DNA of 64,000 nt, from positions 1,860,001 through 1,924,000 of the forward strand of contig CM119372.1 of the NCBI GenBank assembly GCA_051294905.1, written 5' to 3'. Origin of the DNA: Botryllus schlosseri. Lineage: Eukaryota. Below, one piece after another: positions 1 through 64,000 of the stretch; position 1 is the stretch's first letter; every line of letters begins with the position of its first letter. The notes below the pieces were generated by a model. That model worked only from the letters and a program-made list of their open reading frames with translations. It did not search any database and was not told where the DNA came from. A program made the translations under genes and the position numbers.

Positions 1-1819
1 TTTAAAATCGAACATTTTCAGCATTTCAGATTAGAGTTCGAATTATAGCTACACAGTTTTTTTCCAAACCAGATTAGATTTAGGATTACTGAATACGGAC
101 AAACTTGGAAATTGAATTTCGAATTAGAACGAAATATCGAATATGAGTTCATACTCATAAGCATAACAGTGGCGAATGTCTGTACGCCGACCATGGCGAG
201 TTCGCACTAAAGTACACAGTTTTCCTGTAACATTATCGGGAAATCCGAAAATTAGATTAGATTTACATTACCGGCATTTCGCTCAAATCCAGATTGAGGG
301 CAAAATTTCTAGATCGCGGGCAGCATTCAACATCGGAATCCATTCGCGGACCGCACTATACGCAATTGCGATTATAAACCAAAACGCAATATTGGTATTT
401 GATTATATAGTGAGGATATCGAGATATGTATATTATATATTTAAAACAAACCAAACTTTAATTTGATGATAAGGTACACGCGTCAGAAACATTGACGAGG
501 TGTTATAAGCTGGTCGACCTGACCAATTTGTCAAAACTAGGGATGATGTTAGGTTGTCCGATTCTTAGGACAACATGGAAATTTGAATCTCTGAACAGCG
601 ATCTGTTCATAGATTTGCTGATTCTACTTTTGGTTCAACCCCAGTATAAAATGCTGACAGCATCATAGCCATGCTAGCTTCAAATACGCTTTTACAATAT
701 GTATACACTTTTATACATCTAAAATAGTACATTGAATGCTCTCTTAATTCGAAATTTCATGCTGGTGACGTCATATTTTGTGATACGATTGTTGATATAC
801 AATGCTCTTTCCAATTCTCTATTAGTTGCTGACGATTGTATTCGAAAATATTCGGGTTCGTTAAATATACTATCCAATCGCATATTGCAGTTCTGTACCT
901 CTTCTACACATAACAGAACGAATCTAGACCTAAAATCGTTTTTTTCTAGTACAACACTAAAATGAGTGCTGGATTGGCCAATGTAAAACCACACTCGTTA
1001 TCCGAGTTTCGTCATTCCCGTTTTGACTTTGTGATGTTAGCAGTTGAGGATGGTGCTATCGTGACAACAATGAAAAAAATACTATACCATAGTAGGAATA
1101 TAACTTATAATTATATCATGGTCAAATATATCATGAAAATCTTTCATCCAGTCCCTGCAGTAATTAGATTTTTAGTACAAATTTTACTAATATTTTCATT
1201 ACCCTTCTTGAGACTTTCCCGGGCCGCACAAAACAGTGTACGGACCGCAGTTTGCCCACTCCTGCCTAATCAGTCTAATCAGACAACTAGAATCGTCTAA
1301 ACTGATGTAGTCGGCCCGTCCCACTCTACTGGCGTTGGAATATTATAAGCAATAATCAGACACATTTTTGAGCATTTTATTACGAAACATGGAATACACC
1401 CGAACAGGTATAAAAATTGCACAACAAATGCGAGAGACACTGCAGTTATCATATAAAAACCAAAACAAAGCGATACATTACAGAATATGTTAACTGCAGA
1501 TAAACAATAAAACTGGCATAAGAAACAAAAAGAAATGCTGAGTCAGTTTCTATAGCAGACATTCACACCTTCGCATGTACTGGCAAGTGATCATACCTCA
1601 ATTTTGTCGAAAGAAAAACGTGTGGCTCACCTTTTGATATCACAGTTTACCCGCCGGATCATCGTTCGATAAGAATATTAATTTCAGAGGAGAGGACTTA
1701 GTTCATGATCATCAGAACCGTCGCTATTACAGGAACGGTATATTTTTGTATTAGTGCATCGAATATTGTAAATTGGACACCGGTTAACAATGAAGACAGA
1801 ATATTGAAAGCATATGCAC

Positions 1820-2242
1820 TAGGGTTGTTCAAAAATAAGATTGTCTAACTGTTAGGTTGGCTAAAAAACGTAGCACACCACATTTGGCCTGATTCCAACT
1901 AGTAGAGGCGAAGTTATAGGAAAGGAACATAAAAATTTGGGATTTGAAAAAAGTATTTATGGTGGGTATCCTTCCTAGAATCATAAATGAAAAACTCAAA
2001 TAACTTCACTTTTACGGGTTGGCAATGAGTCAAATATGTCTTCCATGAATTTTGTGTACGACTTAACAATTTCATGGCTTAGCCAGTAAAATAAAAAAAT
2101 GTATTATTTCATAAAGCAAAAGTTTGACAATCTTAATAGTTTGATTTGTAATAGTTAGTGTTCAACGTTTTTTAGCCAACTTAAAATTTATAATAAATAT
2201 CACTTAAGGTTTGAAGAAAACAGCTATTTTTGAACAACCCTA
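1820..2242. mobile_element. hAT-type MITE (423 bp)
   Basis: TIR TAGGGTTGTTCAAAAATA / TATTTTTGAACAACCCTA; near-perfect 8-bp TSD ATATGCAC / ATATACAC. Confidence 0.85.
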
Positions 2243-5405: not shown

Positions 5406-8400
5406 CTGAAAAAAGGGGTCGATGATGAATATTTGTCTTCTAACGGTACGGCTATCACGGAGAGTGATACCAGTGGCATAGGTATTTCCAAGATAATCGT
5501 GCAGAAATCTCCGGTTTACAACCGGATGTACTTGGCCAACAAAGGTAATACCAGAAGTCGGGTTTCTAACCAAGATGTAAGGTTCCGAGTCACAAGCCAA
5601 TCTCGCTATTATAGTTTTGACTCGAGAGTCAAATCGAGTCATTTTCAATTCACCACCGTGTCAAGTCCCAACTCCAAGCCAGTGAGTAGAGGGTCGAGTC
5701 TAAGTCATATCTAAACTTTCCAAGTATCAGGACTGATAGACGAAATACCAATAATGTGGTAACTTTACTATTCTTCGACGTTACAATGAAATGACCAGAT
5801 GTTACCAGAGGCACACTTACACAGCTGATACCGGAGGTGGTCAGTAACGAAGTACTTCTACTTTTTAAGAGTACTTCACAGGGTTGTAACCAGTAGTGGG
5901 CGTGGCATCTTCACGAAATTCGTGCGGAAGAGGGCGATCTCAACCAAGTATAAGCAGATATTATACCAAAATTGGTCAGTAAATAGGTTTTGTCTATTTG
6001 CTACAGTGGTTATCGTCGACGATGAACAGTGGTTAGACTACTTTCACCTCTTTTTGAATCTATACATCTCTAAAACTGCCGCACCTCTTCGGTTGGTTGC
6101 TCTTCCACCTCCTGAAACGAGTGATGCTCCTCCACGTTCTGCCGGTTATCCTCTCTCGTTTCTTCCGTCACTTGATCGTCGACGTCTTTGCCTTCTTTCC
6201 GCGTCGGAGACCTCTCGCGATGGTACACGAGGAAGCAGATTGTCAGCAGCAAAGACGCGATGATTCCCAGCAGCATCGCGATAATGATGTCATGATGATT
6301 ATCTGAAGGTGGTGAAATTGCTGTTTAAAACGGAGCTGCACATGTAGAAAATGTCCAGGTTTTACACATTAAACTAGAATTATAGCAATGAAATTATTAT
6401 CCAAATTTGATTGGAATCAAAATTATTGAACTCCTAAAAATCAAGTAGCCTACAGTTCACATTAGATCTAAACAGGAGAAAGGCGAATGTCAGTACATCA
6501 AGCTTAGCTCGTTTCGCCCTATACAGTTTCCTGTCACGATTTCAGGAAAACCAGCGATTAGATTAGAATTAGATGATCTGCATTTCTAATTCAGTTGTTC
6601 TGAACCTGTGGTAAAATTACAGTTTTCAGGAATCGTTACCGTAACTTTTTCTAATGCAAGAAATATCTGACTCGAATGCATAGTTGAATATCTTACGAGC
6701 CAGTCGATTCATTTGCACTCTGCCTGGTGCTGGAGAAGTTACAATTGCAACCATCAGCTAAAATCTTGCCTTGTTAGGGGCAGATTAGCTCATGTGCCGC
6801 ATTTATTTAGACATTTCTGGGCCAACGTACTTGCTAACCCGACCATGTCAATAAATAATAACCCTATATATTTGAATGAGATGACGCAGCAAAATCATAT
6901 AACCAACGGTGTAATCAAACAAGTAGAATTATCTAGCGCCCTCGTCTGATTACAATAGCATGAACAGACACTTACCCTCTAAGAACGTGAACAATCGCAG
7001 CATCGCGACGAAATCCCTGTCCAAATAGGACTCCGTACAGTTGACACACGCCGTCGCGTTCTCCATGGGGAAGTCGTTGCGGATGACCACGTAATCATCC
7101 GGCCGGAGTGTTTCGTCGGACCCCGCTACAGGCTGGTCTGTGAAGTTCGACGCAGACGACGGCAGCGATGTGTTGACTTTCAGAGATGTGACCGGGGTGG
7201 CGTTGGTTGCCGATTCTGAGGATGCGATGCGAGTGTTACTTGATATATTCTTACAAAAATGTGATAAGTGACCAATGCCGTTGTCTAATCCGAAGTTGGA
7301 AAAATAAAGAACTTTTCAGCATTTTCAAATTAGATTAGATTAGAATTATATTCCTAATTCTAAAAAATACAACACAATCAAAGTTCAATTCATATCAAAT
7401 GAAAGTTATTCTCATAAGCATGACAATGACAAACGTCTGTGCGCCAAGCTTGGCTCGTTCCGCACTGTATAGTCCTGCTGTTACGTTTTCAGGAGAACAG
7501 CACTTTAGATTAGAATTCAAATGATAGCATAGAAACATTTCGCAAAATTAGATTGGAATTACATCAGCTTTAGAACAAGAATTATCTAAATGTACATTTC
7601 TAGTCTCACCTGTCCGATCCGAATCGAACGCTGATCTAACAATTTTAATCTCCCCCGGATCAGTCACGGTATACCCAGGTAGGTGACCTGCAGCAGATAT
7701 ATATGTTCATTTACATGGCGGCCAGAGGAGGCGGAGGGGTCAGTCTCCGAGACATGTAAATACTACAAGTAGAAAATGGAGTCTGAAAATAACCCGTGAC
7801 TCTAGGTCTAGTAATAACTTACAAAAGTATATTAGGTGGTGGGGTCGCACACTCTAAGCCAGCGGTTCTCAACTACCGGTCCGTGGCAAGTTCCCTACAG
7901 TTTCAATGTCAAGATTTAAGAACGGAGTATCATCTATTCAGCACGAGCTTCTCCACCCATTGTAAGTCAACACGTTTCTATTACAGTACATCTGCAACGT
8001 TTCGACCAACACGTCATCATCACGTCATCACCAGATAATACTAAGGCCCGACGTATGTCTGAACATCTGCACATTAAATTTATGAGACCGAGTCGATATT
8101 TGTGTTCGAGATATGTAATGAGTCAAACAAACCCACACCTGTAGTACACATTTTACGCACGTGACATCATATCCAAACCTAACACCGCGTGAAGTTTCTT
8201 ATAACGATGGTTTACACAGCCGCGTTGTATCGATATTCAAAATGTAAGAATATAGCCATTGAAAACAGAAAGACTGGTTGAATACTATCGGAGGTACAGA
8301 ACCTCGATATACGATTTAATAATATATGCATATTGAATAAAACCGACTATTTTCGGCCGACACTCGTCAGGGGTAATCGTCAGCAACTTGTACCCCTAAT

Positions 8401-11162
8401 CAGTGCCAGCCTAGAATATTCGAGTTCATTTCAATATGAATTCACTGTTCAGTTGTAATGAAGTTCTGTACCTCCACTGGTCGATGAAGATCACCCCTGA
8501 CCTATCCTACAATATTCAGGTTTATTCCAATATGAATACATTACTCAACTCAATAGAAAACGTTCTATATCGTAATATAATAACATTACCGCGCCCTTGA
8601 TTGATGAGAATCACACTATAGAAATTGAACTTCTATAATCACACAGAAAACTCACTGTTCACGCTTGAACGAATATGCACAGTGGATTGCACAGTGGATT
8701 GCAAGGTGGAAAGTGATTCTTCTGTGGTCGTTGTCACAGCTACGCTTGTCGTCGGCAAACTTGTGGTTTCCGGCACAGTTGTGGTTCGCAGCCTTTCGTG
8801 CGTAGGCACTTCAGAAGTTAAGAGAAAGCTGGGAACTGGAAGTAAAAAAGAGAACGAGATGATTACGTATAATTCATCTCACCGGGAATGTCGTATTTAT
8901 GCATTGACACGCGGACGAAACCAGTGATTAACGATACTGCATAATTTCCGGATCGAATGCAAACAGTACGTGCCAGTAGACCGTACCTGGTGGAGTGATA
9001 ATGTCGCTCATACTTTCTATAGTAAATAGATGCCATAGAAGGCATAGTATTAGTTCTGCTTAACAATACGAAAGAATTAACCCACACGCATATCCGTCGA
9101 ACACCTTCGCCAACAGTGCAGTGGTTCTTAACCTTACTAACCTGACGAGCCCTTACGCTAATCTGCCAGCCTTCCGCCTATGCTCACAAAACCAAATCCT
9201 CCACCTCCACCACCTTACATCTAATACATTATTGTATAGAATAGTTGCGCACAAAATGAACTGTACATCAACAGCAGTGCTAAGGAAACCTTTTGAGTAT
9301 CTCATAGCTTACTAATTCAACAAAAATTATGAATGCAACTTTTGTCAAAATTAAGATCAACTTTCTTGCGATTTTAGCGCAACAAAACTTTCCCTACTAA
9401 TTACGCTATTTCCCTTGTATGGCCGTAGGGGTCCCCGCGAGAACAATATATGTGCTGTGAATACATGGCTATGTATCCCTCTCACAAAACTTTGTTGGAA
9501 GGATTGATTGAAAAGAAACAGAAAAAGAAATTGTTGCACTGCCAAAATCTCATTTTAAACCAAACCTTCAGACTTGAATACGCTACCCGGTTAAAATCTA
9601 AATATATCTAGCAGCATATGCTTATCATCACGAAACCGCTACCGGAAACATTCGACATTACGAACTAACTCAGTTATAGAAGTACAGATGTAGCGATTTT
9701 TTAGAGCTATCATTCAAAGAAAGATTATCCAAGGCAGATTGATTGATCGATGGTAAAGCTTCCGCAATTCAGCAGTAACTCGAATCAGGCCAATATATCA
9801 ACACGGAAACGTAATGAAAAATAACGACGTAGTCACGCCGGCTAGGCTCCACTCGTCGTATAAAAGACCTGTCTAGTTCAATCATAACATCCACTTAGGC
9901 ATATGGTTGGTTGAAATCATGTTCCGTCCGCGTTTTTCTCTGCACAGGAAAATTGTTTCGGTTTTTGAAAGCATTCGATCAGCAGAAACGCGCGGTTTAG
10001 CTCGATGTTTGCAAAATACGAAAATACCACATCAAGCTTTGACCATGATATTCATTATTCGTTTCTTCCTACCTTGTTATTGACTGATGAGGGGTGGAGC
10101 TATTGCTAGCGACATGCTCCGGTTTAAGAGCATAGAGTTAAGACATGTTTGCGCCATTTTTGGAGGAACAAAACTTCACTATGCAATTGAATAGTATATT
10201 GAAATAAACTGGAATATTTTCTACTGTAAGCGAGGAGCGAGCTATATGGAATCCTCCAACAAAAACATCGTTTCGGTGCTACGACAAGCCTTGGGAGCTT
10301 ACTTTCCTCAAATTACATAGGAATAATAATAAGATCTTGGTTGCTTTCACACCTTATTTAACGTCCACTTGCAAAGTAATAATTATATTTATTACACGAG
10401 CTTTCGGAGCGCCGCTCCTTCATCAGGTGTTAAAGTATAATAATAATAGAATTACTGAATCCGGAAATTCTGAATTAGAAAACTAAAAACTAAACTAGAA
10501 TTAAAATGAGAGAATAGAAACATTTCACAAATTAGATTAGAATTAGATTAGCGGCATTTCGCTTCAAATAATCTAATTAGGCAACAAGAATTATCTAATT
10601 GTCCAAATCGCCTATGGCAGCTTTTACAGGAGCTACAAGACAGCTAAAAGCTGAAATAGCGGCCAGCTTAGCTATTTATCTGCTTGTTGCTGGTAGGAAC
10701 TAGGAAGAATTCAACTCACCCAGTCGCACTTGCTATTTGCAAGGACTTAACCAGTATTAAGAAGGTGCTTTTATCTGGCATTTCAACTGCACCATCAATC
10801 ATCCATTATACGGACGGCCGCAAAACCGACACCAATATTGACAAACGTACGGAACGTACATAGGATATCGTCTCCGTAAATGCCACACACGACCCGTACT
10901 TAACTCTTGTCGGAAGACATAAATCAGACATCTCTAAACTTTCAATTGGATTGTTCGCGGACCGTCGATGCATTGTGAACGAAATTGATGTATACATACA
11001 ACTGCGTTGATACATCTATGCCCGAACATATTGTTGAATTTTTTTTTGAACCGAACTGAATCGAGAAAACATCGCGCAATTTCTTGATGCTATTTTGAAC
11101 GTTCATGCATTTCCGGAGCATGGGACGCATTTGTACACATCATCTATATACCATATATGTAC

Positions 11163-11200
<38 letters not shown>

Positions 11201-14200
11201 CTGAGAGACCGAGAGGAAGGATTGCATACAAAGCAACGACAGTCCTAATAACCGTAAGACTCTGTAGCATTGTAGCAAGCAAAGCCTGTTTCAGAATCTG
11301 TATGCCCCGTAATATTCTCTTTAACAAACTGGTACATAATTCTCCTCGCTGAAAACTAGATATACTAGCCTACACCTTAAATGTGACTAACCTACTCCGC
11401 CAATATGCTATATCGACATGGGATGCCTTTAGGAAACCCATCGCTTCAGAAAACAGTCCTTATCCGCGGCACGCATCCTGAAATATCGCTGGATGTATGT
11501 TTGTGTGGAACAATTTCGCAAATGTTTGCGTTGGCGATGAAATTTAATAAAGAAATCCAATTAAACGTCACATCCAACCATAAATAAACATACAACTCGA
11601 TTGTCCATCGCAAACAAGCCGACCCAATTTTTGACAAATTTATCTTACATCCTCGAATATGAGAAATGGACTGGACCGTTTCGCGCCAACAACACATTGC
11701 GTTATCTTATCATACATAAAGTATCTTCAAACATACTTCAACACCTGAGGTATAAGGTTACACTGTCAAATACGCAGAAGGACCTTCACGTATCAACGAA
11801 AAAACGGTGATAAAACAGTGTGTGTATTGGTGTATAGCGGTTGACATCGTTGCATTATGTCAGAAAACTTCAAGATAGATTTCAATAATATGATGCGATT
11901 GTTCAAATACAATGTTCTTTTCCATTCTCTATAGTTGCTTGCGAGTGACGATTACCCCTGGACGAGTGTCAGCCGAAAATATTCAGGTTTATTTCAATAT
12001 GAATGGGTCAATCAAATTGTATATTGAAGTTCCGTACCTCCACGAAGCTCTTTTAAATAATATATTTGTCACGTAAATATCTTAAAACTTGAATCCAGAA
12101 ACTGATTCAGGGAACTGTTTGTAATTTTAGCACAAATTCCGGGGCACAGAACTTCGTAAATACGTTAAAACCCGAAGGTTTATCAAGGAACTGTTTTTAA
12201 TATGAAGAATGACAATACCTTTTGGGGTACATAACTTCAAGATACATTTAAGTTTAAAATATATTCAGGGTTTCCATCGACACGAACCCAAAAATAAGGA
12301 CAGTCGAAAAATTAGATTGGCATTAAAAAGCGTTTTTGTACATACTGTGTAATTTATACGAGGCGTGGCATATCATTTTCCATACTTTCGCCAGAAAGAA
12401 TCGGCTCCAGCAACTCCTTGTTATCAGAAAGTGCTTCATTGATCTCGCGACCGCTCAGGTCTAGGTTTACCTTTACTCAGGGCCAAAACAGCACTTCGTC
12501 ACCCCCCCCAAAAAAAGCCATACGATGGTCTTGGGGCCCCATAGGGTGATAAACCAAACTTCTTCACCTCGCTGTGATTGGAGGCGTCAACCAATATGGG
12601 AAAAGAGTAAGACTGTACACCAAGTTCAGACAAAATCATTTTTGAGTGTATGGAGCAAGACCTCCAGTAACAATGCTTGTAGTCTTGGTCCTGACCGAAG
12701 CAAACTCCTTGCGATGTTAGAATCGGGGAATATTGCGATGTGCAATTGTTGGTGAGGAATGATTGCTGGCTTTTTGTCAGCATGGAATGTCCCAGGTATC
12801 CTCAGCAGCAGCTGACACACTTCCTGTGTTTTGGGGTATCAATATAAGTTGAAATAGCGGTCTTTTTCATATGGCCTCCAGGTCAATGTCACAATTGCAG
12901 ATATTGCAACACAGATACCAGAGGAAAATGATCGAAGTTCTGTAGTTGTTGAAAATAAGACAAAATAAGGACGCAACTCGAAAACATGGACATTTCTTAG
13001 AAATAAGGACAGTTGAGTTTTCTAAGACGTGGCTCTTCAAAATAAGGACAAATCTTAGAAATAAGGACGGTATGACAACCCTGAATATATTCAATATTCA
13101 TTATGCAAATAAAATATATCAAACCCAGGAGCTTTGAGTTTGAATATATTGACAAAACGAATATATTATTACAGTATCAAGGTTTTGTACCCCAAGACGT
13201 CTCTTAAAATGAAAAACAGTTCCCTGATTGCTAGGCGTGACAAAATGCGATGCAAATATATTAAAACAGGAAGCTTTGGGTTAAAATACGTTTACAAAAT
13301 GAATATATTAATAAACACGTTTTTAATTTATAGCCGTCTCGTTTACCTCGCATTGCAGAGCATGAATACGAACTTAATAAAACGCCCGAATATTACGCCC
13401 CATCCCGTTATATTTGAACGATTTAAATCATCATAGGCTAAATTTATTGCGAACGTCGCATTCCAGATCTTCCCGGTATAATGTAACGGCAAACAAAAAA
13501 TTCATCATGTTGTGGAATTCGTCATGATTCGACATATCAACATTTAACGGTCGAGCGGAAAAACGCTGAACAGATCATCCATCATAACTGCAGGCCCGAA
13601 ATGGTGAAATCACTAGTCTGTCACTGACACTTTTATTACGTGTGTTGTCACTAAAACGTGACATAATGTAACAGAAAATATCAATATCTGAAATATCTGT
13701 ACCACGGACTAGCTATTCAACGAAATCTGAGCGCGCGGAACTAAATTAATTCGTCATCAATTCACGGCAAGATTGCCAATATGCAATGTTCTTTCCAATT
13801 CTCTACAAGTTGCCGACGATTACGCCTGACAAGTGTTAGCTGAAATTTTTTCAAGATCATTATATTATCCAATTGTATATTTGAGTCCTCTGTACCTCCA
13901 AGAAACTCTTCAGGTGTAGCCTAATATTGAAGATTCAGCGATAACATACAACCACGATCGTTCACAATAACTACCTCGGCTATAATGAAAGTATGAACTA
14001 CTTTGAGTGTACAATACAAGATGACTCCCCTTGCGTTCCAACGTAAACTATTGCACTATCTGATGATAATTAATAGAACCAAAAGCAAATCTGGCTTACA
14101 TAGCCTTCATTCATGGTGCTATCCACGCATCGCTCAACGTTCCAGCTAGATAAATCTGCCGCGCGTAATACGGGATGACCTTACTTATGTTATCTTAGCA

Positions 14201-46018: not shown

Positions 46019-46789
46019 GTCACCATCTGTGACTTTTATTACGCGACACGGATATGCAATTCAACACGGACTAATCATAATACTGGAATGTTAAAGGCAA
46101 CATATGTTACGGTCAGACTTATTCGAACTGCTGGACTTTCAAAATGCGCTACAAGAAATAGAACTGCTTCTTAGAGGTATAGAACATCAATCTACAGTTG
46201 AAGATTATATTAATACTGAAATAAACCTGAATAATAATTCATTCTGACACTCGTCAGGGGTAATTCTCAGCAACCAGTACAGAATTGGACGGAACACTGT
46301 ATAATCGACCAAAAACTATTGAACCAACGACGTTTATAAATCCTCATCCAACTAACTAAGCACAACTAACTAATACGAATGACTGATTTCCAAATGATAG
46401 GCGTTTCAAACGGATGGGTTTCAGAGTTTGAAATGGGAGGCGTTTCGACCCAAAAAACCCACCCCTGATTATACGCTATACTGTTCGTAGTCACGACTCT
46501 GAGCTAGAAATGGCCCTAAGAACATGACACAGTAGCACACCGGTGTCATGATTCACGTCAAACGACGACACGCGTTTTCTAGTTGTTAAAATGTTCAGCA
46601 ACTATTTTTTATAAATGCGCAACTAGAACTAAAACTAAAGCTACACGCTTTTCTTTTCAAATCTCGCAACCTATAACTTCAGAAAACGCATTGCTCTATC
46701 AAGTATGCCGGCCATAATTGTGGAACAGCATATCGCCGACTATCCGACATTCGTCTAGCATGACAAGTCGAAATACAAGCAATTTCTTC

Positions 46790-50420: not shown

Positions 50421-53400
50421 AAATAACAATAAACTCAACTCGTTGTCTGTATCAGATACGACCGAATAGACATCGCGAACGATTGATTAATTCTATCCAT
50501 AATCCTCTGTTTCGATTACGAATCACAACTGGAAAGAGGTTTTGCGCAATTTATACACAGGATTGAATTCATTCGCATGATTTGCTGAAATTGCAGACCC
50601 TGTTATGATGGGGTAGGGCGTTTTGACGGTAATCGTTATACCACCAAAATTCAAGTATGATTAGGGCACATCAAATTCAAGTCGAATAGTGCGAGTCGAT
50701 TTGTACGAGTAACGTATATATACGACTTCACACCAGGATAGATATTTTATCTGCGCAAAACAGAGTTTCAATACTTTATGACCATACCTTGCCAAAGGTT
50801 GCGAATATTAACGGCACGACATTTCCTGTCAAGTAATCATAGACTATCACAATGGTCACAGATAGTTTTGGTGCTTGCAGAAACACCAGATTACTCTGGT
50901 CTCTGGCTGACATGTAATTGGCGTCACATGAAACTAATTCCTAACATCATTTTCCATGGGGCCGATAAAAGATTCAGCTTTCAAGTTCGAAAGTCATTAT
51001 TATTATAATTTCACGTCATAATAACTGGTGCTCGAGTACTCGAGGCTTAGTATTCGACTTGATTCGAATCGTTCAGGAACTAGATTTTACCCAGTTATGA
51101 TTTGACTGCCGAATTTACTATTTTATCATTCGTCAGCGACATGCACTATAGATTACTACCATTCATGTGCTGTACCTACACAGAAGCATACGACATAATG
51201 ACCAACATCGGATACTGATGGTAAGTGTATTGTGATTGCGATATCTCACAAGGTTTTCCTACGTTCGTTTTATGAATAACGACTGCACGTAATGAAACCA
51301 ATTTGAGAGTTATTAAATATCGTATTTTACGTCAGTGGTTACTCAAGCAAACCTTGTCAATATATTTTAGGCCTAGTTTACAACATCAAATCATCTCATT
51401 TACCAAAGCTTCGTAAACAGAAATTTGTCACGAAAGATGACATCCACCGGATCCACGGATCGAAAATATTGGGAATAAACATCAACTTCAATTTCGCAGT
51501 GGTATTGATACTACAACCGAGATGACATTGTAAGCTGAGTGCAGTCACCATGACTAAGCTTGCACAACGATGGAATTCGCCACACACACATTGTGATGCA
51601 TTCGGAATTGATATTGGTAAGACACTCATTTACTAGAAGGAAGTTATCTAGTTTGTCAGTTTAGTGAAGTTTATCAGAAGAGCTTCTTTATAAGTAATTT
51701 CATCATCTCAAAACAACGCAAAATTGCCTTAATCGGTGATTCTGGACCTTTACTAACCCGGGAAACGGGGAAACCCTTCCTCTAATCTTCAAGTCTTCGG
51801 GAACCCGAAATTTTCACCGAGTCATAAAATAAAAATCTACTCCACTACACATTTGATATATTACTAGAATACCGGTGAGAAAAGTACTGCGCATCAACAA
51901 AAAACTGTGCATCAACAAAGAGGTATAAGAGCAAACCATCGAAATAGAATTTTCGCGTAAAACGAAAACCTTAAAATGAATAACAAATTATATGCAAATG
52001 TAAGTGTGTTGGCCCGCAGGGAACACTAGTTAAGAAACGCTAGCTTAAATGAAAAAGATAGCAAGGGGTGACGGGAAGGACTTGGAGTAGTCTTTCAATC
52101 AAACGCACTGATTTCAAAGTAACAGAGTAATACATGAAAAGGACAGTTGATTTGATATACAATGTTCTTTCCAATTCTCTACTATAGTTGCTGACGATTA
52201 CCAGCCGAGAATAACCGGGTACGTATAAACATAAATATACTAGTCAATTGTACATTGAAATTCCGTACCTCCGAGAAGCTCTTTGAAAAGGCCAAGAGAT
52301 GAAAAAACACTGTAAGTATTAAACTCAGAATACAGTGGAACAATTAGCATTTACAACTAAACCGACTCGCGAGTTCTCGCTGCATTCATACCGGTGTACG
52401 AAATAAGAAGCTTATCACATAAGTCATTATATTTGCGTGATAAAACTCCATAATATCTAATGCGAGCCGACATGATTGCAATTTTCGGTGAAAAGTAGAC
52501 GATTTACTGACGTAATCCGGAATCGCCTTTTTGAAAACGCGATCGGTATTCTGTTTACTGTTTACAATTGACAACCTTAATTCGATAATTGTGGTAGATA
52601 AGAAACAAAGCTAACGCCTTCAAACGTAACAGAGTGAGAATTTGTGGTCACGCCCCAGTTCTCAACGAAGTGAATCAAGCGGAAATGCTTCGATGTGGAT
52701 ATATGGTTTTCGAAGGTATTTTATACACGCAGATGTACCGACGAGTCTGATCAGTAACTCCGAAGATTCAATTCAACAGCTGTAGTCAAGGCAGAGTAAT
52801 GTATATTTAATCAACACCTCGTTGGATATGTTCTGCATGTCTCTACAAGACTTCTCTCAATCCCAACTATTCGACTCACAATCGCAATTAAAGACAAACA
52901 ACAAGAAGTCAAAACGGCATTTTACGACTCTAGACCGCTATATTAGCCGTTAAATTAGTATCACTCATATCAATGAACGATTTCATGTGTGTGTGTAAAC
53001 TGTGTATTCTGTACTTGTTGCTGACGATTAACCCTGGCGACTGACAGCCGGATAACCCTGGCAACTGACAGCCGAAAATATCCGGGGTCATTTCAATATG
53101 AATATGCATTATACTAAATTTCTGTACCTCCAAAGGTATCTTCAAATATATGTTTAACTCCTCATCAAAAGACAATTTTAAGGAAATCGAAAATTTCCTC
53201 CGAGGATGCCTCAATTTCATCCTTTTTGGCAATTCGTCCTCCTTTATAGCTGTGACAGCGAGGCCACAGGACGACCACAACAACGCAAAACGACATAAAT
53301 GAAGCGAAATCTGTAATGTGGATATTCGAGCGGGTAATAATAGTGGGTCATGCGGGAGTCGAGTTAGATAAACGATTTTTTAGTCAACACAAGAGCATTT

Positions 53401-54030: not shown

Positions 54031-54086
54031 TAACTGTGCTTCCCAAGAAATATTCAGTTAACTGTGCTTCCCAAGAAATATTCAGT
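54031..54086. repeat. Perfect 28-bp tandem duplication
   Basis: TAACTGTGCTTCCCAAGAAATATTCAGT x2. Confidence 0.95.
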
Positions 54087-55442
54087 AATACATAGAAGTG
54101 AATTTTGCTATGTAGTTCGTGGCTAAGTGTCAGTAAATTGGTAAAACCGCCAAAGCGCATCGAAGCAGTCATAAATTGCTCAAGACCACTCGGAAATCCC
54201 ATAGGATAAGTATGGCCTCAGAATAGAATCCAATTGGAATGTCTGGGTATTCAATGTACTTGCTAGCACACGCCTTACACGTGATGGCTTTTCACTGTAA
54301 AGAAATTCTTGTTGTGCCTAAGAAGAAACAAATAGGAATATCCAGGGAATTATGGATAGTATCTTCTGTTGCTGTTTCATCTGAACAAATGATCAATCTC
54401 ATATACTGTCTGTTACTTAAGTTGCAGGTGTAAAGAAACAGGCTGCATACTCAGCGTAGAAAATATATACAGAAAACAACCAAGCTGCACCCACGTCTTC
54501 TCGCTTGTACCTTGCTCTCGTCAAGTATGCGTTAATGTAAATGGAGACTAGCGTTTCTAACTTGTCAGATGATAATTGCCGTATCTGAACCTAGCAATTT
54601 GTACATATTATAATCAATTCGTTCCGATTGTTGTACAGTACAAATTTACGAACATGCCCGCAATCAACTAACTTTACATGCACCGTTGACGCATCAAATA
54701 ACTTCGTTTGTTACTATATAATTGGCGTTGCAAGATTACGGTTTTACTGCTTACTGTACGATTCAACCATCTATTCGCGATCGATACGAATCGAGCGACG
54801 TAGATTTAAATGTAATGCTGTTACGAAACGCCTGGTAAACTAAAAATCTCAGTAAGTTGACCATTATCTCAGCCACCCTGAAGCAGACTCTTATCAACGC
54901 GTAATGTGACCGTGCTGACGGACTACAGTAAATGACCCATGCCAAAAACGTCCGCAAATGAACGCATGTAAACTTTACGTCGTCACTCAGCGAAAACACC
55001 TTGCTATTATCAAGCGGTTCGATTGAGAAGGTTGGTGATTCATCGCACTATCGCTGCATTAAGATTACGGTACGATGTGTATCTTTTTCGGTTCAATCAC
55101 ATGGGAGAAAGGAATCCGGGGCAAATTAAAGAAGATCGGCGACACTGTCGCCTATAACGTGATAAATGACTTGTTTGGTAAATATTTTGATGGGTGAATG
55201 TATAATCCCGATTCGCCTTCATCAAATTGATGTAAGCTAAATGCGTATGTTCATGGCCTACTAGTAGGCCATGGTATGCTTAAGCGCGGATTTATTAAAC
55301 CAGTTATTTCGTACCAAGAAAGCTGGTACGGTTCTCGGTTAGGACTTCACACACGTAATACAACTTTTGTTTCGGAAACAATTACGTACTTGAAGATACG
55401 ATAGGACGAACAGAACTTCCATGTACAATTGATTAGCTGATT

Positions 55443-55476
55443 ACCCCTGACGAGTGACAGTCGAAATTACTCGGGT
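55443..55476 (+). ncRNA. Minimal type I hammerhead ribozyme (family B variant)
   Basis: ACCC CTGACGA GTGACAGTC GAAA TTAC TC GGGT; all core positions and helix I intact. Confidence 0.68.
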
Positions 55477-58400
55477 ATATTTCAATAGGAGCATATTATT
55501 CAATTCATTATGTACTTATGCACAGATTGTAAACTCCGCCACGCAGTTATCTTTAATACAGCCAACTCCCTCTGTCATGAGGTCTTTTATGGGGATCAAC
55601 AAACAATATTGCACAGATCTGAATCTTAGCGCGTCTAATATGATGAAATTCCGCGATTGCATCTGGCACCAACACGATGAAATCACCATTCTGAGAAAGC
55701 TGTAATTGGATAGGCGACTTCAGGAAGAGAATCCCGTAATCATACAATACCCAAGTGACGCCCATGGTGACACCGGGGTATCCCGTCTTGACATCGACGT
55801 ATAAACCGACTTTCGTTTCATTATTCATTATGTAACTCGAGACGAATAAGCACTGAAGATTTTCCGATCAACTTAATCTTGTATGTAGCATAGCTCTACC
55901 AAACCAATATATTTATTATTTTGCAAATCGTGAGTTGGGCTCGGCAAATCGAGTACCATATCGAAAATCGAGTCGATGAACTAGTGCAAGTAAACAGTAT
56001 GGAATACAGACATTGTTAACAGAATAAGACTCGTAATGAACTTAAATCGTAACCAAAATATACAGATTTACTCTCAGCACGAGATTATAATCAACCATGA
56101 AATGGCACTGTTGGACTTCTTACCATCACCGCTGCACATATACAAATGTTGTGGTGTCATCGATGCCGGCGAAAATAAACCAATCATTACTAACGAGACG
56201 ACAAATCATCAACAACATACTTAGTAAGTCTAATCCACATCAGTCGTATTCCGATAACTCGTTGCTCAAGGCAACGTTAGCACAAATCGGCTTACTGTAA
56301 GGTGGGACGAAAGCCCGGCGGTTCATTAGCAGGTTTTTATTGATCAATGGCAGTTTATTTTATCGCAGCCACAGCGGGTTACAAATGTCCGCAGAACTGG
56401 ATTTCGGCGACCCAATTCCCACACTCGATCAGCACGCTAATTGGCATTACAATTACAGCAGTGATTTCTGATGAAGATCTGACTGCATTTTACCTTGTGA
56501 ATAGCTAGCCATTTGGAAGCAATCTGATAGAAGTGCTTACCTCATGGATATGTTATTCATCTTATAGTAGATTCACAGCAAACCTTGACTATTTTAAGCT
56601 TTCCAAATTGTATTATATTTAGAATTCCAGCTACAAACCCTTTTTCCGAATCAGAGTAGAATTGGAATTATAGCTCCACAGTTGTTTCCAAATTTGATTA
56701 GAATTAGAATTACAGCTACACAGTTATTTTTCAGATTAGATAACAATTACTGAATTCCCGAAAATTTGGACATTAAATCAAGTTCCGTTAATATCAAATC
56801 ATAATTCATTCCTGCGAGTATGATAATAGCAAATGTCTGTACGGCAGGCTTGGCACATTTCGCAGTACGGTATATACTTCTCTTGTAGCATTTGCAAGAA
56901 AGCCAGAAATTAGAATGAAAATTAGAGCATGGAAAGATTTCACGAATTACATTAGAATTAGAGCAAAGAAAGATTTAACAAATTAGAATAGAATTAGATT
57001 GCCGGCAATTCGCTCTAATTAGTCTAATTCGACAACTAGAATTATTTAGTTGTCCAATGTCCATGTCTGGTTCACGTGACCTATAAGCCATCAGATACAC
57101 AGCGAAAAGCTCAATAATCCATTATAAATTACTGCGCAGTGCATGATGGCGATAACGATTTTTAACCGACCGGGCAATACCTTACATTTCTCGTTAAATT
57201 CCGGTATTTTTCAGTAATCACAACATCAATGATCAAAATTCCTTGCATTTCAACTGTGCTGCGGTCGCAGCGAAGGAAATTCAACGCAAAACTAACATCA
57301 ACATTGAACAGTGTGACGTAATAAATTACACCTAGTTTTGATAATGTAGCTTGGTATGTCCCACAATTTTAGTTGCTAACAGTAAAATGACTCGCTTCCG
57401 TTGATATTAAGTTTTTTGGCTTGTAGGCCTTTATATTCCCGTGTAGCGGTAGAGACGTGTTAAGACGGAAATGGTATAATTGCTTGGAATTTGCATTGGC
57501 ACGTTACGTTATAAATCCATAGCCGCGTTCATAGAGAACATTTAATAGAAGTTAGTGTCGCTATACCTCTGTAATCTGATACAATATCTAGGACGCTATA
57601 CTGTAGCGTAGCCACTAGCCTGCCATGGAGAACTAGATAATAATTCCAATTGTCTAATTAGAGAAATTACAACGAAATGCCGGTAATATAATTCTAATCT
57701 AATTTGTGAAACGTTTCTATCCTAATTTTGATTCCAATCAAATTTCCCTGAAAATGCTACAGAAGAACTGCGTCGCGCGAAACGAGTCAAGCTTGCTGTA
57801 CAAAGACATTTACCATTCTCATGTTTATGATAATTCACTCTGATTTGATAAGAACTTAACTTGATTCAAGTTTTCGCGAATTCAGTAATTCTAATTCTAA
57901 TCTAATTTGGAAAAACCTGTGTAGCTATAATTCTAATTCTAGTCTAATTTAGAAAAATTGTATTGCTATATTCTAATTCTAATGTAATTTAGAATAGATG
58001 AATATTGTCCAAGTTTGACTGTAGCCTCCTATATCATTATAATCGGCATTGCAACTAATTTAATGGAAAAATCTCTGCGTTGCCCAAGACTCTCTCTGCA
58101 AAACGACATTACCTACTGCACTGCACACAGATCCCGCAAAATATTTGCGTCCCCTCACAATACTGCGACATTCGAACCGCATAAACGCGAGGATTTTACA
58201 CTCGCAATCTGCATTTACGCAGCTGCACCAAAACAAGACCGGTCAATCTGTGTCTACGACACGCTCCTTCGCATTTAACCTTTCCCTGCACCTGACGGGA
58301 GGCTGGCGATCTACGCGTTCCTGCCGTGCGGCTCAAGTAACGTAAAGGTTCTGTGTAAACAGAGAGCTCGCACCGATAATGTCCGGTTGTAGAAGACGCT

Positions 58401-61400: not shown

Positions 61401-61554
61401 ATTCAGTAATTCTAATTATAAGATAATTATAATATAATTAGAAAAAGACCGTGTAGTTATACTTCTAATTCTGATCTAATTTGGAAAGGCGGTAAATGTT
61501 CATGTTCATTGTTCATGTTGTCTATCGTTGCCACCGCCCAACATGGGTTTGTTT

Positions 61555-61825
61555 GTAGCATTCATGCTGTCTGTCGACTACCACGGTCATTTACACCAGC
61601 GGATTTTCTTCATTCATATTCAGTAGCTGCTGACCTGCAGCACGACCCTCTTCTAGGCATTTATAAGACACCGCTACGGGCTACGCGGATGATATGGCGA
61701 GGAGGAGCCTAGATAAACCTCCAACACTTCGGTAGGAGTTCTGGAATCGACCTCAGCCGGACTCGAACCCACAACCCATTGGTGTTGTAGCTGTGGACAC
61801 ACCACGTCACACGCCAAAGATGGGT
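61555..61825 (-). mobile_element. tRNA-derived SINE, near full length
   Basis: B-box GGGTTCGAGTCC and a degenerate A-box; body shared with 5'-truncated copies at ~39125-39300 (+) and ~49380-49515 (+); CAAA-like tail. Confidence 0.7.
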
Positions 61826-64000
61826 TGAAAATGAGTTGAGTAATTTGGGCCGATATGCGAGATAATAGACGCGCCAATGCAACGTCCAATCTTGGTTAAT
61901 CACTCCTACAGTCATCACGCCTGCCGTAATTAGTTTTCGAAATGTGAGTAAGTAATCCCTCGTGACGTCACCCATAACACAGTCTCTGCTGAGCACAATT
62001 TTCGGTTTTTGTTTCTGAGCTAATTGCCGCGTCGCCGGACTAAACGGATTATCTTGCAACAACGAGGCAAGGTAACTACGACTCGTCGAAATTATAATGG
62101 CCGTGTGTCTCATTCATAAAAAAAATAAGTACTACAATCGCACTTGGATGGTAGTAGTGCAAACGTAGCGATTTCTATCAGGTTGAACTCATCCGGTACG
62201 GTCTTACTAGTTTTAAATCGTAAGAACTTGAAGAACAGAGGCGGTCAATGTTGTCAGCGTGGCTACTCTGATAGAGGTAGAAGAGATGTCGTAAATCACT
62301 ACTCAATTGCAAGTAGAAGTTGCAGTTTCCAAGACACATCTGTAAGTGGAAGTAGAAAATGAAGGTTTAAATGCTACCCGAGTAAGTAGTCTCAAAAAGT
62401 AGATTTGGTCGGGGAGTCGCATACTTTTTGCGGTTAATCGATGGTGACTGGCTACTTCTGAAATTGCTGGATCTTTCGTGCCCCTGACTAATTGCACTAC
62501 CAATATGTACACTGTACAGCACAGTTTCCAATTTACAATTGCACAGCATATTCATATTCAAATAAACTCGGATATATTATCTGTAAGAGTATCTTCATGT
62601 ACAATCTTCGAAAAGCTGGGGAGGTAGCGTTGAGGCGAGCGTCGGTGCCATCTACGCAGGCGGTCCGCGCTCGATTTCCGCAGTCGGAGGTTATTCTGGG
62701 CCCCCGGGTCCCCGTGTCGCTGTTCTTACGGCGACCAAAAAGCCCAGAAATAAAAGACCCGATAAAGAAAGAAAAGGAAATAGAATATAAAAAGGGCCGA
62801 CGAAGAAAGAATGGCATCGAAGAAGATTACGACATCGCGCATACATCGCATTGTGTTTGTACGCGGCGGATGAAAATATAATCTGATGCTGGGCCTACGT
62901 AGGCCTCGTCTGATGATTAGTGAAATATACTCAGTTGCCGTGATATTGGGCTGATTAGCCACATCTGTTCCTAATGTTCCGTATATAGGCCCTATCTTTG
63001 ATGCTTTTTATGTTTTAATTAAGGGGTCATTGGCCTTTTTGAAATCAGGAGCTACGTCTTGTAACTAATTAATGCGACAGGCCACCAGTTACTGCTGCCG
63101 TCCATCCGTGCTCGGTTGGATTTCCTTCCACCCCTTACCAATAACAGATTATTCTCACTCACCGGGACTTACATCTGAGTCTCCGTGTTCAGCTACGTGG
63201 CCGCACTGCGCGTCGAAGCGCCAATCTCAGCATCAAGATTCAGCAATATGAACTAGTTTCCGGTTAAGCGTCGGCGAAAATGTGCACCGCCCCGATCGAA
63301 AGCTGCGTTCGTATGTTCTTTAGGGTCGACTGACCCATGTTCAACGGCTGATCATATAAAACTCTTCTCCGCTTCGACCTTCTAATCTCATTTGAATATT
63401 TGCTACTGTGAGCGGGGATTACTCATTTGGCCCCGCGTTGGTGAGCCCTATTTAATCCATTAATCTTTGCGATTACAATTGTAATGCATAGATGATCCAG
63501 TGGACCAGGTCCAGATACTATCAATTTTTCAACCGAAGATGGCAACTAATCGCAAGGGTTATCCTACAACACTTATGGCTGTAATGTATTCCCGAGGCGA
63601 CATTTTGATGTGATGCTTTACACGTGCGGAATGAAATAGAACTGAAATATGCAGTTATATACATTTAGAATGGAACGCCCCTCTGTTCATCAGAGTTGTC
63701 CGTCATGTGTGCTGGAAAACTGGATAAATTTGGAAATGTAATAGCGCCTTACAGTGGCGAAGCTTCTGTACCGTACAGAATCGCAACGATCACAGCAATG
63801 TGCTGCTGTATATTTCAGTGTAAAAGCTCGGGTCCTGCACATCCCTAAACTGAAACATCCCAACCGATACCGACTTTGATACCAGGAATATACAGTAATC
63901 TCATAGTGGCGAACAACTTGAAGTGAATTCTGTAAATTATGCGTACTCTTTTCACTTCTATCTATCAAATTGAAATTAAGAAACGAAGTTATACTAAATC

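What the first reader, a model, noticed from the sequence alone, without database searches (positions are those of the whole stretch)
720..62600. High-copy dispersed element carrying a minimal type I hammerhead ribozyme (retrozyme / Penelope-like non-autonomous family)
Seen: a ~170-230 bp repeat occurs about 23 times in 64 kb. Its best-conserved block reads ACCC-CUGACGA-GUGUCAGCC-GAAA-AUAU-UC-GGGU, with every hammerhead core nucleotide, a 4-bp helix I, a 1-bp helix II and a self-complementary AAUAUU helix III, ~70 nt from the element's 3' end. Established: minimal type I hammerheads with palindromic helix III that fold as dimers are typical of Penelope-like retroelements and metazoan retrozymes. 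Inference: this is a non-coding, ribozyme-processed retroelement family mobilised in trans, since no RT or GIY-YIG ORF is in the window. It would look like anonymous intron sequence in a standard annotation and may be undescribed in this genome.
Basis: partly seen in the sequence, partly recalled or inferred. Interest (0 to 1): 0.9.

Follow-up and report, generated by a model that had tools for sequence, protein, structure and literature searches.

The report
Penelope retrotransposon tails with pseudoknotted hammerhead
The roughly 23 short repeats are broken-off 3' ends of a very abundant, still intact-looking Penelope-like retrotransposon. They carry its hammerhead ribozyme motif, an ordinary association, except that the ribozyme's second helix is built by pairing with an upstream box instead of by a hairpin.

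Summary
About 22-24 fragments (31-202 bp, 72-96% identity) lie between 721 and 62578, and their shared block holds every hammerhead core nucleotide.

The fragments are not a separate non-coding retrozyme or SINE family. They are 5'-truncated 3' tails of an autonomous 2.68-kb Penelope-like element (RT plus C-terminal GIY-YIG) found elsewhere in this genome, with dozens of open 857-860-aa ORFs. They show the known PLE hallmarks:
- scattered 5' break points
- head-to-head inverted pairs inside one target-site duplication
- an optional ~35-bp tail

The 29-nt motif occurs 3,736 times exactly in the genome and 12,833 times at up to 3 mismatches.

The less ordinary part is the ribozyme. Helix II is one local pair (G10.1:C11.1), plus a 5-6-bp pseudoknot between the "loop" and a box 13-17 nt upstream of the core. 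Eight related PLE families keep this pairing perfectly with different sequences. Helix I, the palindromic helix III and the C3-G8 core pair also covary. More distant PLEs have the classic hairpin helix II.

RNA-seq showed no read ends at the predicted cut site, so catalysis is untested. Only one window copy (27880-27923, minus strand) is intact.

Two earlier follow-ups in this scan reached the same pseudoknot reading on other DNA of this genome.

The parts
27852..28040 (-). Youngest and longest window copy. It matches unit positions 364-558 of the 596-nt reference tail, at 93% identity, and has no 35-bp tail. It is the left half of a head-to-head pair.
27880..27923 (-). The only fully intact 44-nt ribozyme module in the window: box GCUGAC (27923-27918), linker GAUU, helix I ACCC, core CUGACGA (27909-27903), G10.1, U, loop GUCAGC (27900-27895), C11.1, GAAA, AUAU, U, C17. 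The predicted cut lies between 27884 and 27883 and is followed by GGGU.
   Evidence: 0 differences from the family motif
28039..28133 (+). Right half of the same pair. It starts exactly at CTGACGA, so it lacks the box and the helix I 5' strand, and it carries the 35-bp tail. The pair is flanked by the direct repeat ATATTTAGG(A), which marks one insertion event.
721..901 (+). 5'-truncated tail copy (83% identity) with a 13-nt deletion inside the motif.
8291..8474 (.). Head-to-head pair (8291-8392 minus strand, 8393-8474 plus strand) joined without a spacer. A further diverged partial copy follows at 8472-8538 (plus strand).
10157..10221 (-). Short, old tail fragment (77% identity).
11891..12052 (+). 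Single tailed copy with the TSD AATAATAT. The motif has 3 changes.
13771..13912 (+). Single old copy (77% identity). The core is broken (G8 to A without a matching C3 change).
14469..14590 (-). Single old copy (77% identity) with an internal deletion upstream of the core.
16304..16445 (.). Head-to-head pair (16304-16381 minus strand, 16384-16445 plus strand). Both halves are decayed.
19603..19746 (-). Single copy (92% identity) without the tail. The box and helix I are each hit by one change.
21636..21774 (-). Single tailed copy (86% identity) with the TSD TACAGAAT. The loop is disrupted.
28883..29033 (-). Single copy (89% identity). Changes G8 to C and A15.1 to C would inactivate the core.
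46166..46303 (-). Single tailed copy (81% identity).
47437..47905 (.). Inverted pair (47437-47528 minus strand, 47789-47905 plus strand) with about 260 bp between the halves. The core is broken in both (A6 to U in one; G8 to A with loss of G12 in the other).
48306..48523 (.). Head-to-head pair (48306-48425 minus strand, 48430-48493 plus strand, the latter being tail only) plus a 31-bp piece at 48493-48523 (minus strand).
52152..52283 (+). Single tailed copy with a 13-nt deletion joining the box region to the loop; TSD TGAAAAGG.
53006..53133 (+). Old copy with an internal partial duplication of the motif.
55404..55505 (.). Head-to-head pair of short fragments (55404-55436 minus strand, 55439-55505 plus strand).
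62529..62578 (-). Short, old tail fragment (80% identity). It is the last copy in the window.

Best explanation
The repeats are dead-on-arrival, 5'-truncated 3' ends of an autonomous, canonical (C-terminal endonuclease) Penelope-like retrotransposon that is abundant and apparently still active in this 495-Mb genome. The unit is 2683 bp and sits in tandem (pLTR) arrays.

Shown: the copies have scattered 5' break points, 6-10-bp target-site duplications, frequent head-to-head inverted partners made in the same insertion event, and two alternative 3' ends about 35 nt apart (the PLE 'tail').

Inferred from published PLE biochemistry: the two 3' ends reflect reverse transcription that starts at two internal sites of an uncleaved RNA.

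The conserved block is the element's hammerhead ribozyme. It is a compact module of about 45 nt lying 3-19 nt upstream of the ORF start codon in most relatives (66 nt in one). It is a type I, dimer-style minimal hammerhead with helix I of 4-6 bp and a palindromic helix III. Its helix II consists of the local pair 10.1:11.1, presumably stacked on a 5-6-bp pseudoknot between the 'loop' and a box 13-17 nt upstream of the core. A single nucleotide crosses the groove. The conservation of this structure is shown by covariation.

Still inferred: that the module cleaves, probably as a dimer or with helper factors; that cleavage trims tandem or read-through transcripts to give a near-leaderless ORF RNA; and that cleavage is not needed for insertion.
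For: Origin as PLE tails:
- The tandem 2683-bp unit carries an 856-aa open frame (845 aa from the likely ATG) with a Pfam RVT_1 match.
- The ORF has a C-terminal GIY-YIG/CCHH motif. The Pfam GIY-YIG match is weak, E 0.026, but homologues carry PF01541.
- At least 87 RT matches were found, many at 98-100% aa identity with open 857-860-aa frames.
- All window copies align to the last 232 nt or less of the unit, with 5' ends anywhere from reference position 364 to 533.
- TSDs flank both single copies and an inverted pair.
- Among the first 100 exact motif sites on contig 1, neighbours closer than 3 kb are 12 head-to-head, 3 direct and 0 tail-to-tail.
- Two classes of 3' end are seen in the DNA and as loose read ends at 3153-3161 and 3193-3201. 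This matches the PLE tail and internal RT initiation described in PMC11167929 and PMC8557442.

Ribozyme structure:
- The invariant columns across relatives are exactly U4 G5 A6, A9, G10.1, C11.1, G12 A13 A14 and A15.1.
- The box:loop helix is 98.6% paired, and 5 of 6 pairs change on both sides; 0 of 500 shuffles reach this.
- RNAalifold predicts the same helix unaided.
- Eight families carry different but perfectly Watson-Crick box/loop pairs at the same offset.
- Helix I and the helix III palindromes covary, and the core pair C3-G8 changes to U3-A8 or U3.G8.
- PLEs with the split helix II form one branch (SH-aLRT 100, a single change on the tree) among PLEs with the classic hairpin helix II.
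Against: - No Rfam hammerhead model matches, even at E up to 10 on 131 nt.
- In three RNA runs, reads run straight across the predicted cut site with no pile-up of ends. They come from both strands and mostly continue into unrelated flanks, so they are host read-through of dead copies. The ORF has almost no coverage. Cleavage and element expression are therefore unshown.
- Dead genomic copies show no extra conservation of the core (0.92 against 0.915 in the flanks).
- Published PLE hammerheads cleave poorly in vitro and are dispensable for insertion in vitro (PMC4209133, PMC11167929).
- The steric fit of the pseudoknotted helix II was reasoned from pseudoknot geometry, not modelled.
- The relatives are unannotated metagenome or assembly contigs. 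The structural table was built with the hypothesis in mind.
Confidence: 0.8

Rival explanations
1. One reading: the repeats are a distinct non-coding, non-autonomous retroelement family (retrozyme-like or SINE-like) that is processed by its own hammerhead and mobilised in trans by a PLE.
For: There is no RT or EN in the window. The short copies are very numerous: 12,833 motif sites. A 2026 preprint argues that vertebrate non-LTR retrozymes derive from PLE pLTRs. One short direct pair, 212 bp apart, is seen on contig 1.
Against: The 5' ends are scattered over about 170 nt, with no common boundary. Every base of the copies is colinear with the autonomous unit's 3' end. The copies are dispersed singles or inverted pairs, not tandem arrays. 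No circular junction at the cut site appears in the RNA reads. Many copies lack the box or the helix I strand that the ribozyme needs.
Confidence: 0.06
2. The conserved block is no longer a working ribozyme. The box:loop stem and its surroundings serve as a structural signal, for example for RT binding, priming or translation, and the hammerhead core is an inherited relic or serves only as a fold.
For: No read ends lie at the cut site. The hammerhead is dispensable for PLE insertion in vitro, and the anole study likewise found no RNA-seq ends at the site (PMC11167929). PLE hammerheads have low activity in vitro (PMC4209133). Naiad PLEs thrive without canonical hammerheads (PMC8557442).
Against: All catalytic-core nucleotides are invariant across families that share only 40-64% protein identity, while everything else varies. 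The C3-G8 pair, which matters only in the catalytic fold, covaries to U3-A8. H17 is never G. The helix III palindromes are kept with different sequences.
Confidence: 0.13
3. The repeats are MITE-like DNA transposon relics with long terminal inverted repeats and target-site duplications.
For: Five or six units look like inverted repeats flanked by a short direct repeat, for example 27852-28133 with ATATTTAGG(A).
Against: Most copies are single arms. In the pairs, the two arms have different lengths and different inner break points, and one arm may carry the tail while the other does not. The outer ends are the PLE 3' end. The sequence is the 3' UTR plus ORF start of an RT-encoding element. Genome-wide, neighbouring copies are head-to-head and never tail-to-tail.
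Confidence: 0.01

Closest known systems
Minimal hammerheads (min-HHR) in the pLTRs of canonical Penelope-like elements (Cervera & de la Pena 2014, PMC4209133; Lunse et al. 2017, not readable here)
   Same: Both are type I with a CUGANGA...GAAA...UH core, a short helix I (4-6 bp) and G10.1-C11.1. Helix III is reduced to a palindrome, which implies dimers. The U3-A8 core variant is shared. Both sit in the pLTR of an RT plus GIY-YIG element, and both occur massively as single motifs or as close pairs on opposite strands derived from truncated copies.
   Different: The classic form has an unpaired nucleotide followed by a 6-8-bp hairpin helix II; more distant relatives found here show it. In this clade only 8-9 nt separate CUGANGA from GAAA, and the 5' strand of helix II is supplied by a box upstream of helix I, which makes a pseudoknot.
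Poseidon element of Anolis carolinensis (PAc), biochemically characterised (Frangieh et al. 2024, PMC11167929)
   Same: Both have tandem pLTR-ORF units, a hammerhead at the ORF start, two alternative 3' ends (the tail) explained by internal RT initiation, and no RNA-seq ends at the hammerhead site.
   Different: In PAc the ORF starts inside the ribozyme, with the cut 26 nt after the ATG. Here the cut lies 3-19 nt before the ATG in most relatives. The tail here lies 26-63 nt after the cut. PAc has a hairpin stem II.
Hammerheads in which a helix (pseudoknot) replaces the loop I/loop II tertiary contact, and the non-circularly permuted type-SGC hammerheads (PMC10085705)
   Same: A Watson-Crick helix ties the stem I and stem II regions together. 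A short linker joins one side of stem I to one side of stem II, which is thought to hold the two stems side by side.
   Different: Those ribozymes keep a full stem II or reorder the three core blocks. Here the block order is the ordinary type I order, and the pseudoknot itself forms most of helix II.
'HHR_core' motifs of Naiad PLEs (Craig et al. 2021, PMC8557442)
   Same: CUGANGA and GAAA are separated by only 7-17 nt and do not fit stem/loop descriptors.
   Different: These motifs were reported in N-terminal-EN Naiads and left unexplained. Whether they have an upstream complementary box was not tested here.
Metazoan non-LTR retrozymes (PMC7229834)
   Same: They are short hammerhead-bearing repeats that probably derive from, or depend on, PLEs.
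   Different: Retrozymes are tandem non-coding units that give circular RNAs and carry canonical loop-loop hammerheads. The window copies are dispersed truncated ends of a coding element.

Membership tests
Penelope-like element (canonical, EN+) | Single ORF with a reverse transcriptase domain | tested here: met
   Pfam RVT_1, E 7.7e-9, on the 856-aa ORF L029:4814-7384. Homologues carry RVT_1 plus DUF8422 plus HTH_animal.
Penelope-like element (canonical, EN+) | C-terminal GIY-YIG endonuclease with Cys/His insert | tested here: met
   The C-terminal motif VVYEYRCHCDCGYVGRT..R..QH is present. The Pfam GIY-YIG match is below cutoff (E 0.026, 15.2 bits). Homologue clusters P0011 and P0092 carry PF01541.
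Penelope-like element (canonical, EN+) | Partial tandems (pLTR), inverted 5'-truncated partner, heavy 5' truncation | tested here: met
   Tandems of 2683-2692 bp. Five or six head-to-head pairs in the window. On contig 1, 12 head-to-head against 0 tail-to-tail neighbours.
Penelope-like element (canonical, EN+) | Optional 30-40-bp tail at the end of insertions | tested here: met
   Copies end either after ...TATTCAAT or about 35 nt later after ...GAAGCTCTT. Loose read ends form two clusters about 40 nt apart.
Hammerhead ribozyme, PLE minimal type I | Core C3 U4 G5 A6 N7 G8 A9 / G12 A13 A14 / A15.1-U16.1 / H17, in type I order | tested here: met
   Present in the intact copies. These are the invariant columns among relatives, with C3-G8 covarying to U3-A8.
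Hammerhead ribozyme, PLE minimal type I | Helix I closing the junction, with covariation | tested here: met
   ACCC/GGGU, UUCCC/GGGAA, CGCUA/UAGCG, CCCA/UGGG, CAUACU/AGUAUG, ACAG/CUGU, CUCA/UGAG.
Hammerhead ribozyme, PLE minimal type I | Hairpin helix II of 6-8 bp after an unpaired nucleotide | tested here: not met
   Only 8-9 nt lie between the core and GAAA. They are replaced by the 10.1:11.1 pair plus a 5-6-bp pseudoknot with an upstream box. The classic form is seen only in relatives at 38% protein identity or less.
Hammerhead ribozyme, PLE minimal type I | Minimal palindromic helix III (dimer-type) | tested here: met
   AAUAUU, AAGCUU, AAAGCUUU, AAUAUAUU.
Hammerhead ribozyme, PLE minimal type I | Self-cleavage 3' of H17 | tested here: inconclusive
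   No accumulation of read ends at the site in 3 raw-read RNA runs. However, the reads come almost wholly from dead monomeric copies in host transcripts, and the element itself is barely expressed. A bench test is needed.
Rfam hammerhead families | Match to a curated covariance model | tested here: not met
   No match at gathering score, none at E up to 10 on the window, and none on a 131-nt stretch.
Retrozyme (metazoan non-LTR) | Non-coding unit in tandem repeats, each with a hammerhead, giving circular RNA | tested here: not met
   The window copies are dispersed singles or inverted pairs with variable 5' ends. They are colinear with a coding element. No circle junction appears in the reads.
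MITE / DNA transposon | Fixed terminal inverted repeats with a TSD and related transposase termini | tested here: not met
   Arms are unequal with variable inner ends, most copies are single arms, and the ends are the PLE 3' end.

The most novel reading that the evidence does not exclude
The split (pseudoknotted) helix II defines a catalytically competent new architectural class of natural hammerhead. It is specific to one PLE clade that is widespread in marine metagenomes. Cleavage 3-19 nt upstream of the start codon would produce a near-leaderless 5'-OH RNA that drives cap-independent translation of the RT-EN protein. The same upstream-box logic may also explain the unexplained 'HHR_core' motifs in other PLEs.
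Probability: 0.3. Interest if true: 0.7.

Novelty: new variant of a known kind. Interest (0 to 1): 0.5.

Why it matters
As genome annotation, the result is ordinary. It assigns thousands of anonymous intronic and intergenic repeats to one young Penelope-like element, and it shows that MITE-like inverted pairs with a TSD can be PLE insertion products.

The interest lies in the ribozyme. It is a natural hammerhead of about 45 nt in which most of helix II is a pseudoknot with a strand 5' of helix I, supported by eight independently covarying families. This would extend the known structural range of the most studied small ribozyme.

It also shows why descriptor searches and Rfam models miss part of the PLE hammerheads. 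It suggests a concrete, testable explanation for hammerhead cores with spacers too short for a hairpin. The constant position just upstream of the ORF start makes the debated function of PLE hammerheads (processing versus translation) open to direct test.

Tried and rejected
- Rfam scans at gathering score and at E up to 10 gave no hammerhead. The only hits were chance matches to snoZ159, mir-124 and Entero_CRE.
- A local hairpin CUGAC-GAGU-GUCAG, which would sequester the core, was considered as the real conserved structure. One window copy (48306-48425) even shows a compensatory change for it. It was rejected because this pairing is lost in four of eight families while the box:loop pairing stays perfect.
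- Using the upstream CUGACGA box as an alternative core gives no helix I or helix II, so it was rejected on inspection of the sequence.
- Within-genome conservation of core against flank showed no difference, as expected for neutral decay.
- RNA-seq showed no ends at the cut site and no circle junction. The few 'opposite strand' joints are the inverted pairs.
- The single-sequence fold energy is not unusual (z -0.05).
- L150 (P0045) has a reduced and degenerate motif and was left out as ambiguous.
- The look-up of P0113 failed because the service was busy.
- Lunse et al. 2017 (PMC5785218) and the supplements of Cervera 2014 could not be read. The claim that the pseudoknot is undescribed therefore rests on the papers that could be searched.
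- The organism was not identified. Five window ORFs gave no Pfam match.
- Left out of the RT tree because their longest ORF is under 330 aa: L069, L070, L079, L097, L098, L119, L126, L129, L135.


Full report

Yes. The 20-nt core block occurs 13 times at up to 3 mismatches in the window, against 0.01 expected from shuffles. Blastn with the last 596 nt of the full-length unit gives 27 pieces. These make about 22-24 insertions between 721 and 62578, on both strands, 31-202 bp long and 72-96% identical.

In the whole 495.5-Mb assembly (the window is C2:1860001-1924000), the 29-nt motif occurs 3,736 times exactly and 12,833 times at up to 3 mismatches. The reversed-pattern control gives 0.

**2. 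What are the repeats?**

Copies elsewhere in the genome extend much further upstream. They lead to a 2683-bp unit arranged in tandem, for example at C3:10.30 Mb (L029), C17 (L030) and C16 (L033-L035). Each unit carries one long ORF: 856 aa as an open frame, or 845 aa from the likely ATG.
- It has a Pfam RVT_1 domain.
- It has a C-terminal GIY-YIG/Cys-His motif. The Pfam GIY-YIG match is weak, E 0.026.
- Its homologues carry RVT_1, DUF8422 and HTH_animal, and some carry GIY-YIG.

This is a canonical EN+ Penelope-like element (PLE). At least 87 RT matches were scored, many with 98-100% aa identity and open frames of 857-860 aa, plus a second subfamily at 87-88%. The family is therefore young and probably active. 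The nearest full-length head-to-head pair is about 140 kb from the window (C2:2064991-2068831).

All window copies align only to the last 232 nt or less of the unit, that is the 3' UTR, the motif, and the first ~28 codons of the next unit's ORF. Their 5' ends are scattered from reference position 364 to 533. A tblastn of the ORF against the window finds only those first codons.

**3. Insertion anatomy**

Five or six of the insertions are head-to-head inverted pairs with unequal arms: 8291-8474, 16304-16445, 27852-28133, 47437-47905, 48306-48493 and 55404-55505.

The youngest pair is flanked by the direct repeat ATATTTAGG(A), so both arms arrived in one event. Single copies show 6-8-bp duplications.

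Among the first 100 exact motif sites on contig 1, neighbours within 3 kb are 12 head-to-head, 3 direct (two of them at full-unit spacing) and 0 tail-to-tail.

Copies end either just after ...TATTCAAT or about 35 nt further on, after ...GAAGCTCTT. RNA reads show the same two clusters of loose ends.

Heavy 5' truncation, an inverted 5'-truncated partner and a 30-40-bp optional tail are the published hallmarks of PLE insertions (PMC8557442). The tail has been traced to reverse transcription starting at two internal sites of the RNA (PMC11167929). The inverted pairs with a TSD mimic a MITE, but they are PLE products.

**4. The motif**

No Rfam model sees it. Helix II would be a single G:C pair closing a 7-nt loop, whereas published PLE minimal hammerheads have a 6-8-bp helix II (PMC4209133). 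A local hairpin, CUGAC-GAGU-GUCAG, could also sequester the core.

Comparison with relatives settles this. Contigs encoding ORFs 40-64% identical to this one carry the same module just upstream of the ORF.

In all of them, 5-6 nt of the 'loop' are perfectly complementary to a box that starts 13-17 nt before the core. The eight families have different sequences:

| Family | Box | Loop |
|---|---|---|
| this genome | GCUGAC | GUCAGC |
| L064 and a large family | UCUGAC | GUCAGA |
| L065 | ACUAAC | GUUAGU |
| L067 | UCCGAC | GUCGGA |
| L073 | UGACGC | GCGUCA |
| L147 | UCAAGG | CCUUGA |
| L148 | CGUGC | GCACG |
| L149 | CUGGA | UCCAG |

Further support:
- On a 12-row alignment, the box:loop helix is 98.6% paired, and 5 of 6 pairs change on both sides. 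None of 500 shuffles, and none of the slid controls, comes close.
- RNAalifold finds this helix without being told.
- The rival local hairpin is lost in four of the eight families.

The other features also behave as in a hammerhead under selection:
- The invariant columns are U4 G5 A6, A9, G10.1, C11.1, G12 A13 A14 and A15.1.
- Helix I covaries.
- Helix III is always a palindrome, but with different sequences.
- H17 is C, U or A.
- The tertiary core pair C3-G8 changes to U3-A8, or to U3.G8 in one family.

**5. Structural reading (inferred)**

The loop strand runs directly into C11.1, so the box:loop helix can stack on the 10.1:11.1 pair. Together they give a 6-7-bp helix II, close to the 6-8 bp of classic PLE hammerheads. 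The single nucleotide after position 10.1 would cross the deep groove, as loop 1 does in H-type pseudoknots.

The 3' end of the box is joined to the distal end of the 4-6-bp helix I by a linker of 1-5 nt. The total distance from box to core is 7-11 nt, and 8 nt in 9 of 12 cases. This fits the side-by-side position of helices I and II in the active hammerhead. It resembles what was argued for type-SGC permuted hammerheads (PMC10085705). I could not model this in 3D.

**6. Distribution**

More distant PLE relatives (38% aa identity or less) have the classic form: an unpaired nucleotide, a 5-8-bp hairpin helix II, and a palindromic helix III.

On an RT tree of 20 rows (quick IQ-TREE), the eight split-type elements form one branch with SH-aLRT 100. 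One change explains the trait, and the branch is nested among classic-type elements under midpoint rooting. Rows with ORFs under 330 aa were left out.

**7. Function**

The predicted cut (UC^GGG) lies 14 nt before the ORF ATG in this genome. In most relatives it is 3-19 nt before the ATG, and in one it is 66 nt.

The DNA copies run 26-63 nt past the cut, so the RNA that is reverse-transcribed is not cleaved at its 3' side. This agrees with the finding that the hammerhead is dispensable for insertion in vitro (PMC11167929).

The most likely role is therefore trimming of tandem or read-through transcripts just upstream of the ORF. It may be coupled to cap-independent translation, as shown for HDV-like ribozymes of non-LTR elements and for viral hammerheads (PMC13725137). 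This is inference.

**8. RNA evidence**

Reads from one bulk and two single-cell RNA runs, plus one contig set, were laid on a unit junction (L034:2300-3700; cut at 3125|3126).
- Depth is high only over the 190-nt tail region, on both strands.
- Between 60% and 96% of reads run on into unrelated sequence.
- Depth is near zero over the ORF.
- No place was found where molecules begin or end.

So what is transcribed is mostly dead copies inside host transcripts, and they are not cleaved. This is expected for monomers, most of which are mutated. It neither shows nor excludes activity of the intact element.

**9. Dead copies**

In the window, only 27852-28040 keeps all 44 nt of the module. Among 46 diverged copies, the core is no better conserved than the flanks (0.92 against 0.915).

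**10. Novelty**

PLE fragments with minimal hammerheads, including close pairs on opposite strands, are known (PMC4209133). I found no description of a pseudoknotted or split helix II in PLE hammerheads in the papers I could search.

Craig et al. noted hammerhead cores with 7-17-nt spacers in Naiads that fit no descriptor (PMC8557442). The arrangement found here might explain them; this was not tested.

Lunse et al. 2017 could not be read, so prior description cannot be excluded.

Two earlier follow-ups of this scan on other pieces of the same genome reached the same pseudoknot reading. I reached it from my own comparison before seeing them, but they are not independent evidence.

Noticed in passing
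L004:313-855 (G000:C1:29776236-29776778): An unrelated repeat of about 540 bp lies next to a PLE copy. The first look found 4,020 candidates genome-wide, and scored copies are 87-93% identical. It is another high-copy element of unknown type.
   Followed up: no
G000:C9:107941-109107: A tandem array with a 151-bp period is made from an internal piece of the PLE (the part just upstream of its 3' UTR), next to a normal PLE tail. It looks like a satellite derived from the element, and it does not include the hammerhead.
   Followed up: no
L069, L070, L079, L097, L129 and others (metagenome contigs): One abundant related PLE family has the core UUGAAGA, which is a U3.G8 wobble in place of the C3-G8 pair. 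Single copies (L127, L128) have U3-A8. This may be an intermediate in the known C-G to U-A covariation.
   Followed up: partly
L149:1405-1450: In this relative (41% aa identity) the 10.1:11.1 pair is U:A instead of the nearly universal G:C. The pseudoknot (CUGGA/UCCAG) and helix I are kept.
   Followed up: partly
window 4089-5648 (-): A 519-aa open frame lies in the only GC-richer stretch of the window (46% GC at 4001-8000). It is rich in Ser, Pro and Gln and has no Pfam match. It is probably a large coding exon of a host gene.
   Followed up: partly
window 53006-53133 (+) and 8472-8538 (+): These are old copies with internal rearrangements of the motif. One has a partial duplication (CTGGCGACTGACAGCC...CTGGCAACTGACAGCC). 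The other is a diverged copy that directly abuts another copy in the same orientation.
   Followed up: no
L034:3154 and genome-wide reads: A T/C polymorphism in the tail (ACTATTTAAT against ACTATTCAAT) splits the copies roughly in half. Full-length copies of the main subfamily have T, while most window copies and the 88% subfamily have C. This points to several waves or source subfamilies.
   Followed up: partly
window 31602-31656 (-) and 33229-33305 (-): Sub-threshold Rfam matches to mir-124 (20.5 bits, gathering 49) and snoZ159 (23.2 bits, gathering 39). The mature mir-124 sequence is not kept, so these are taken as chance.
   Followed up: partly
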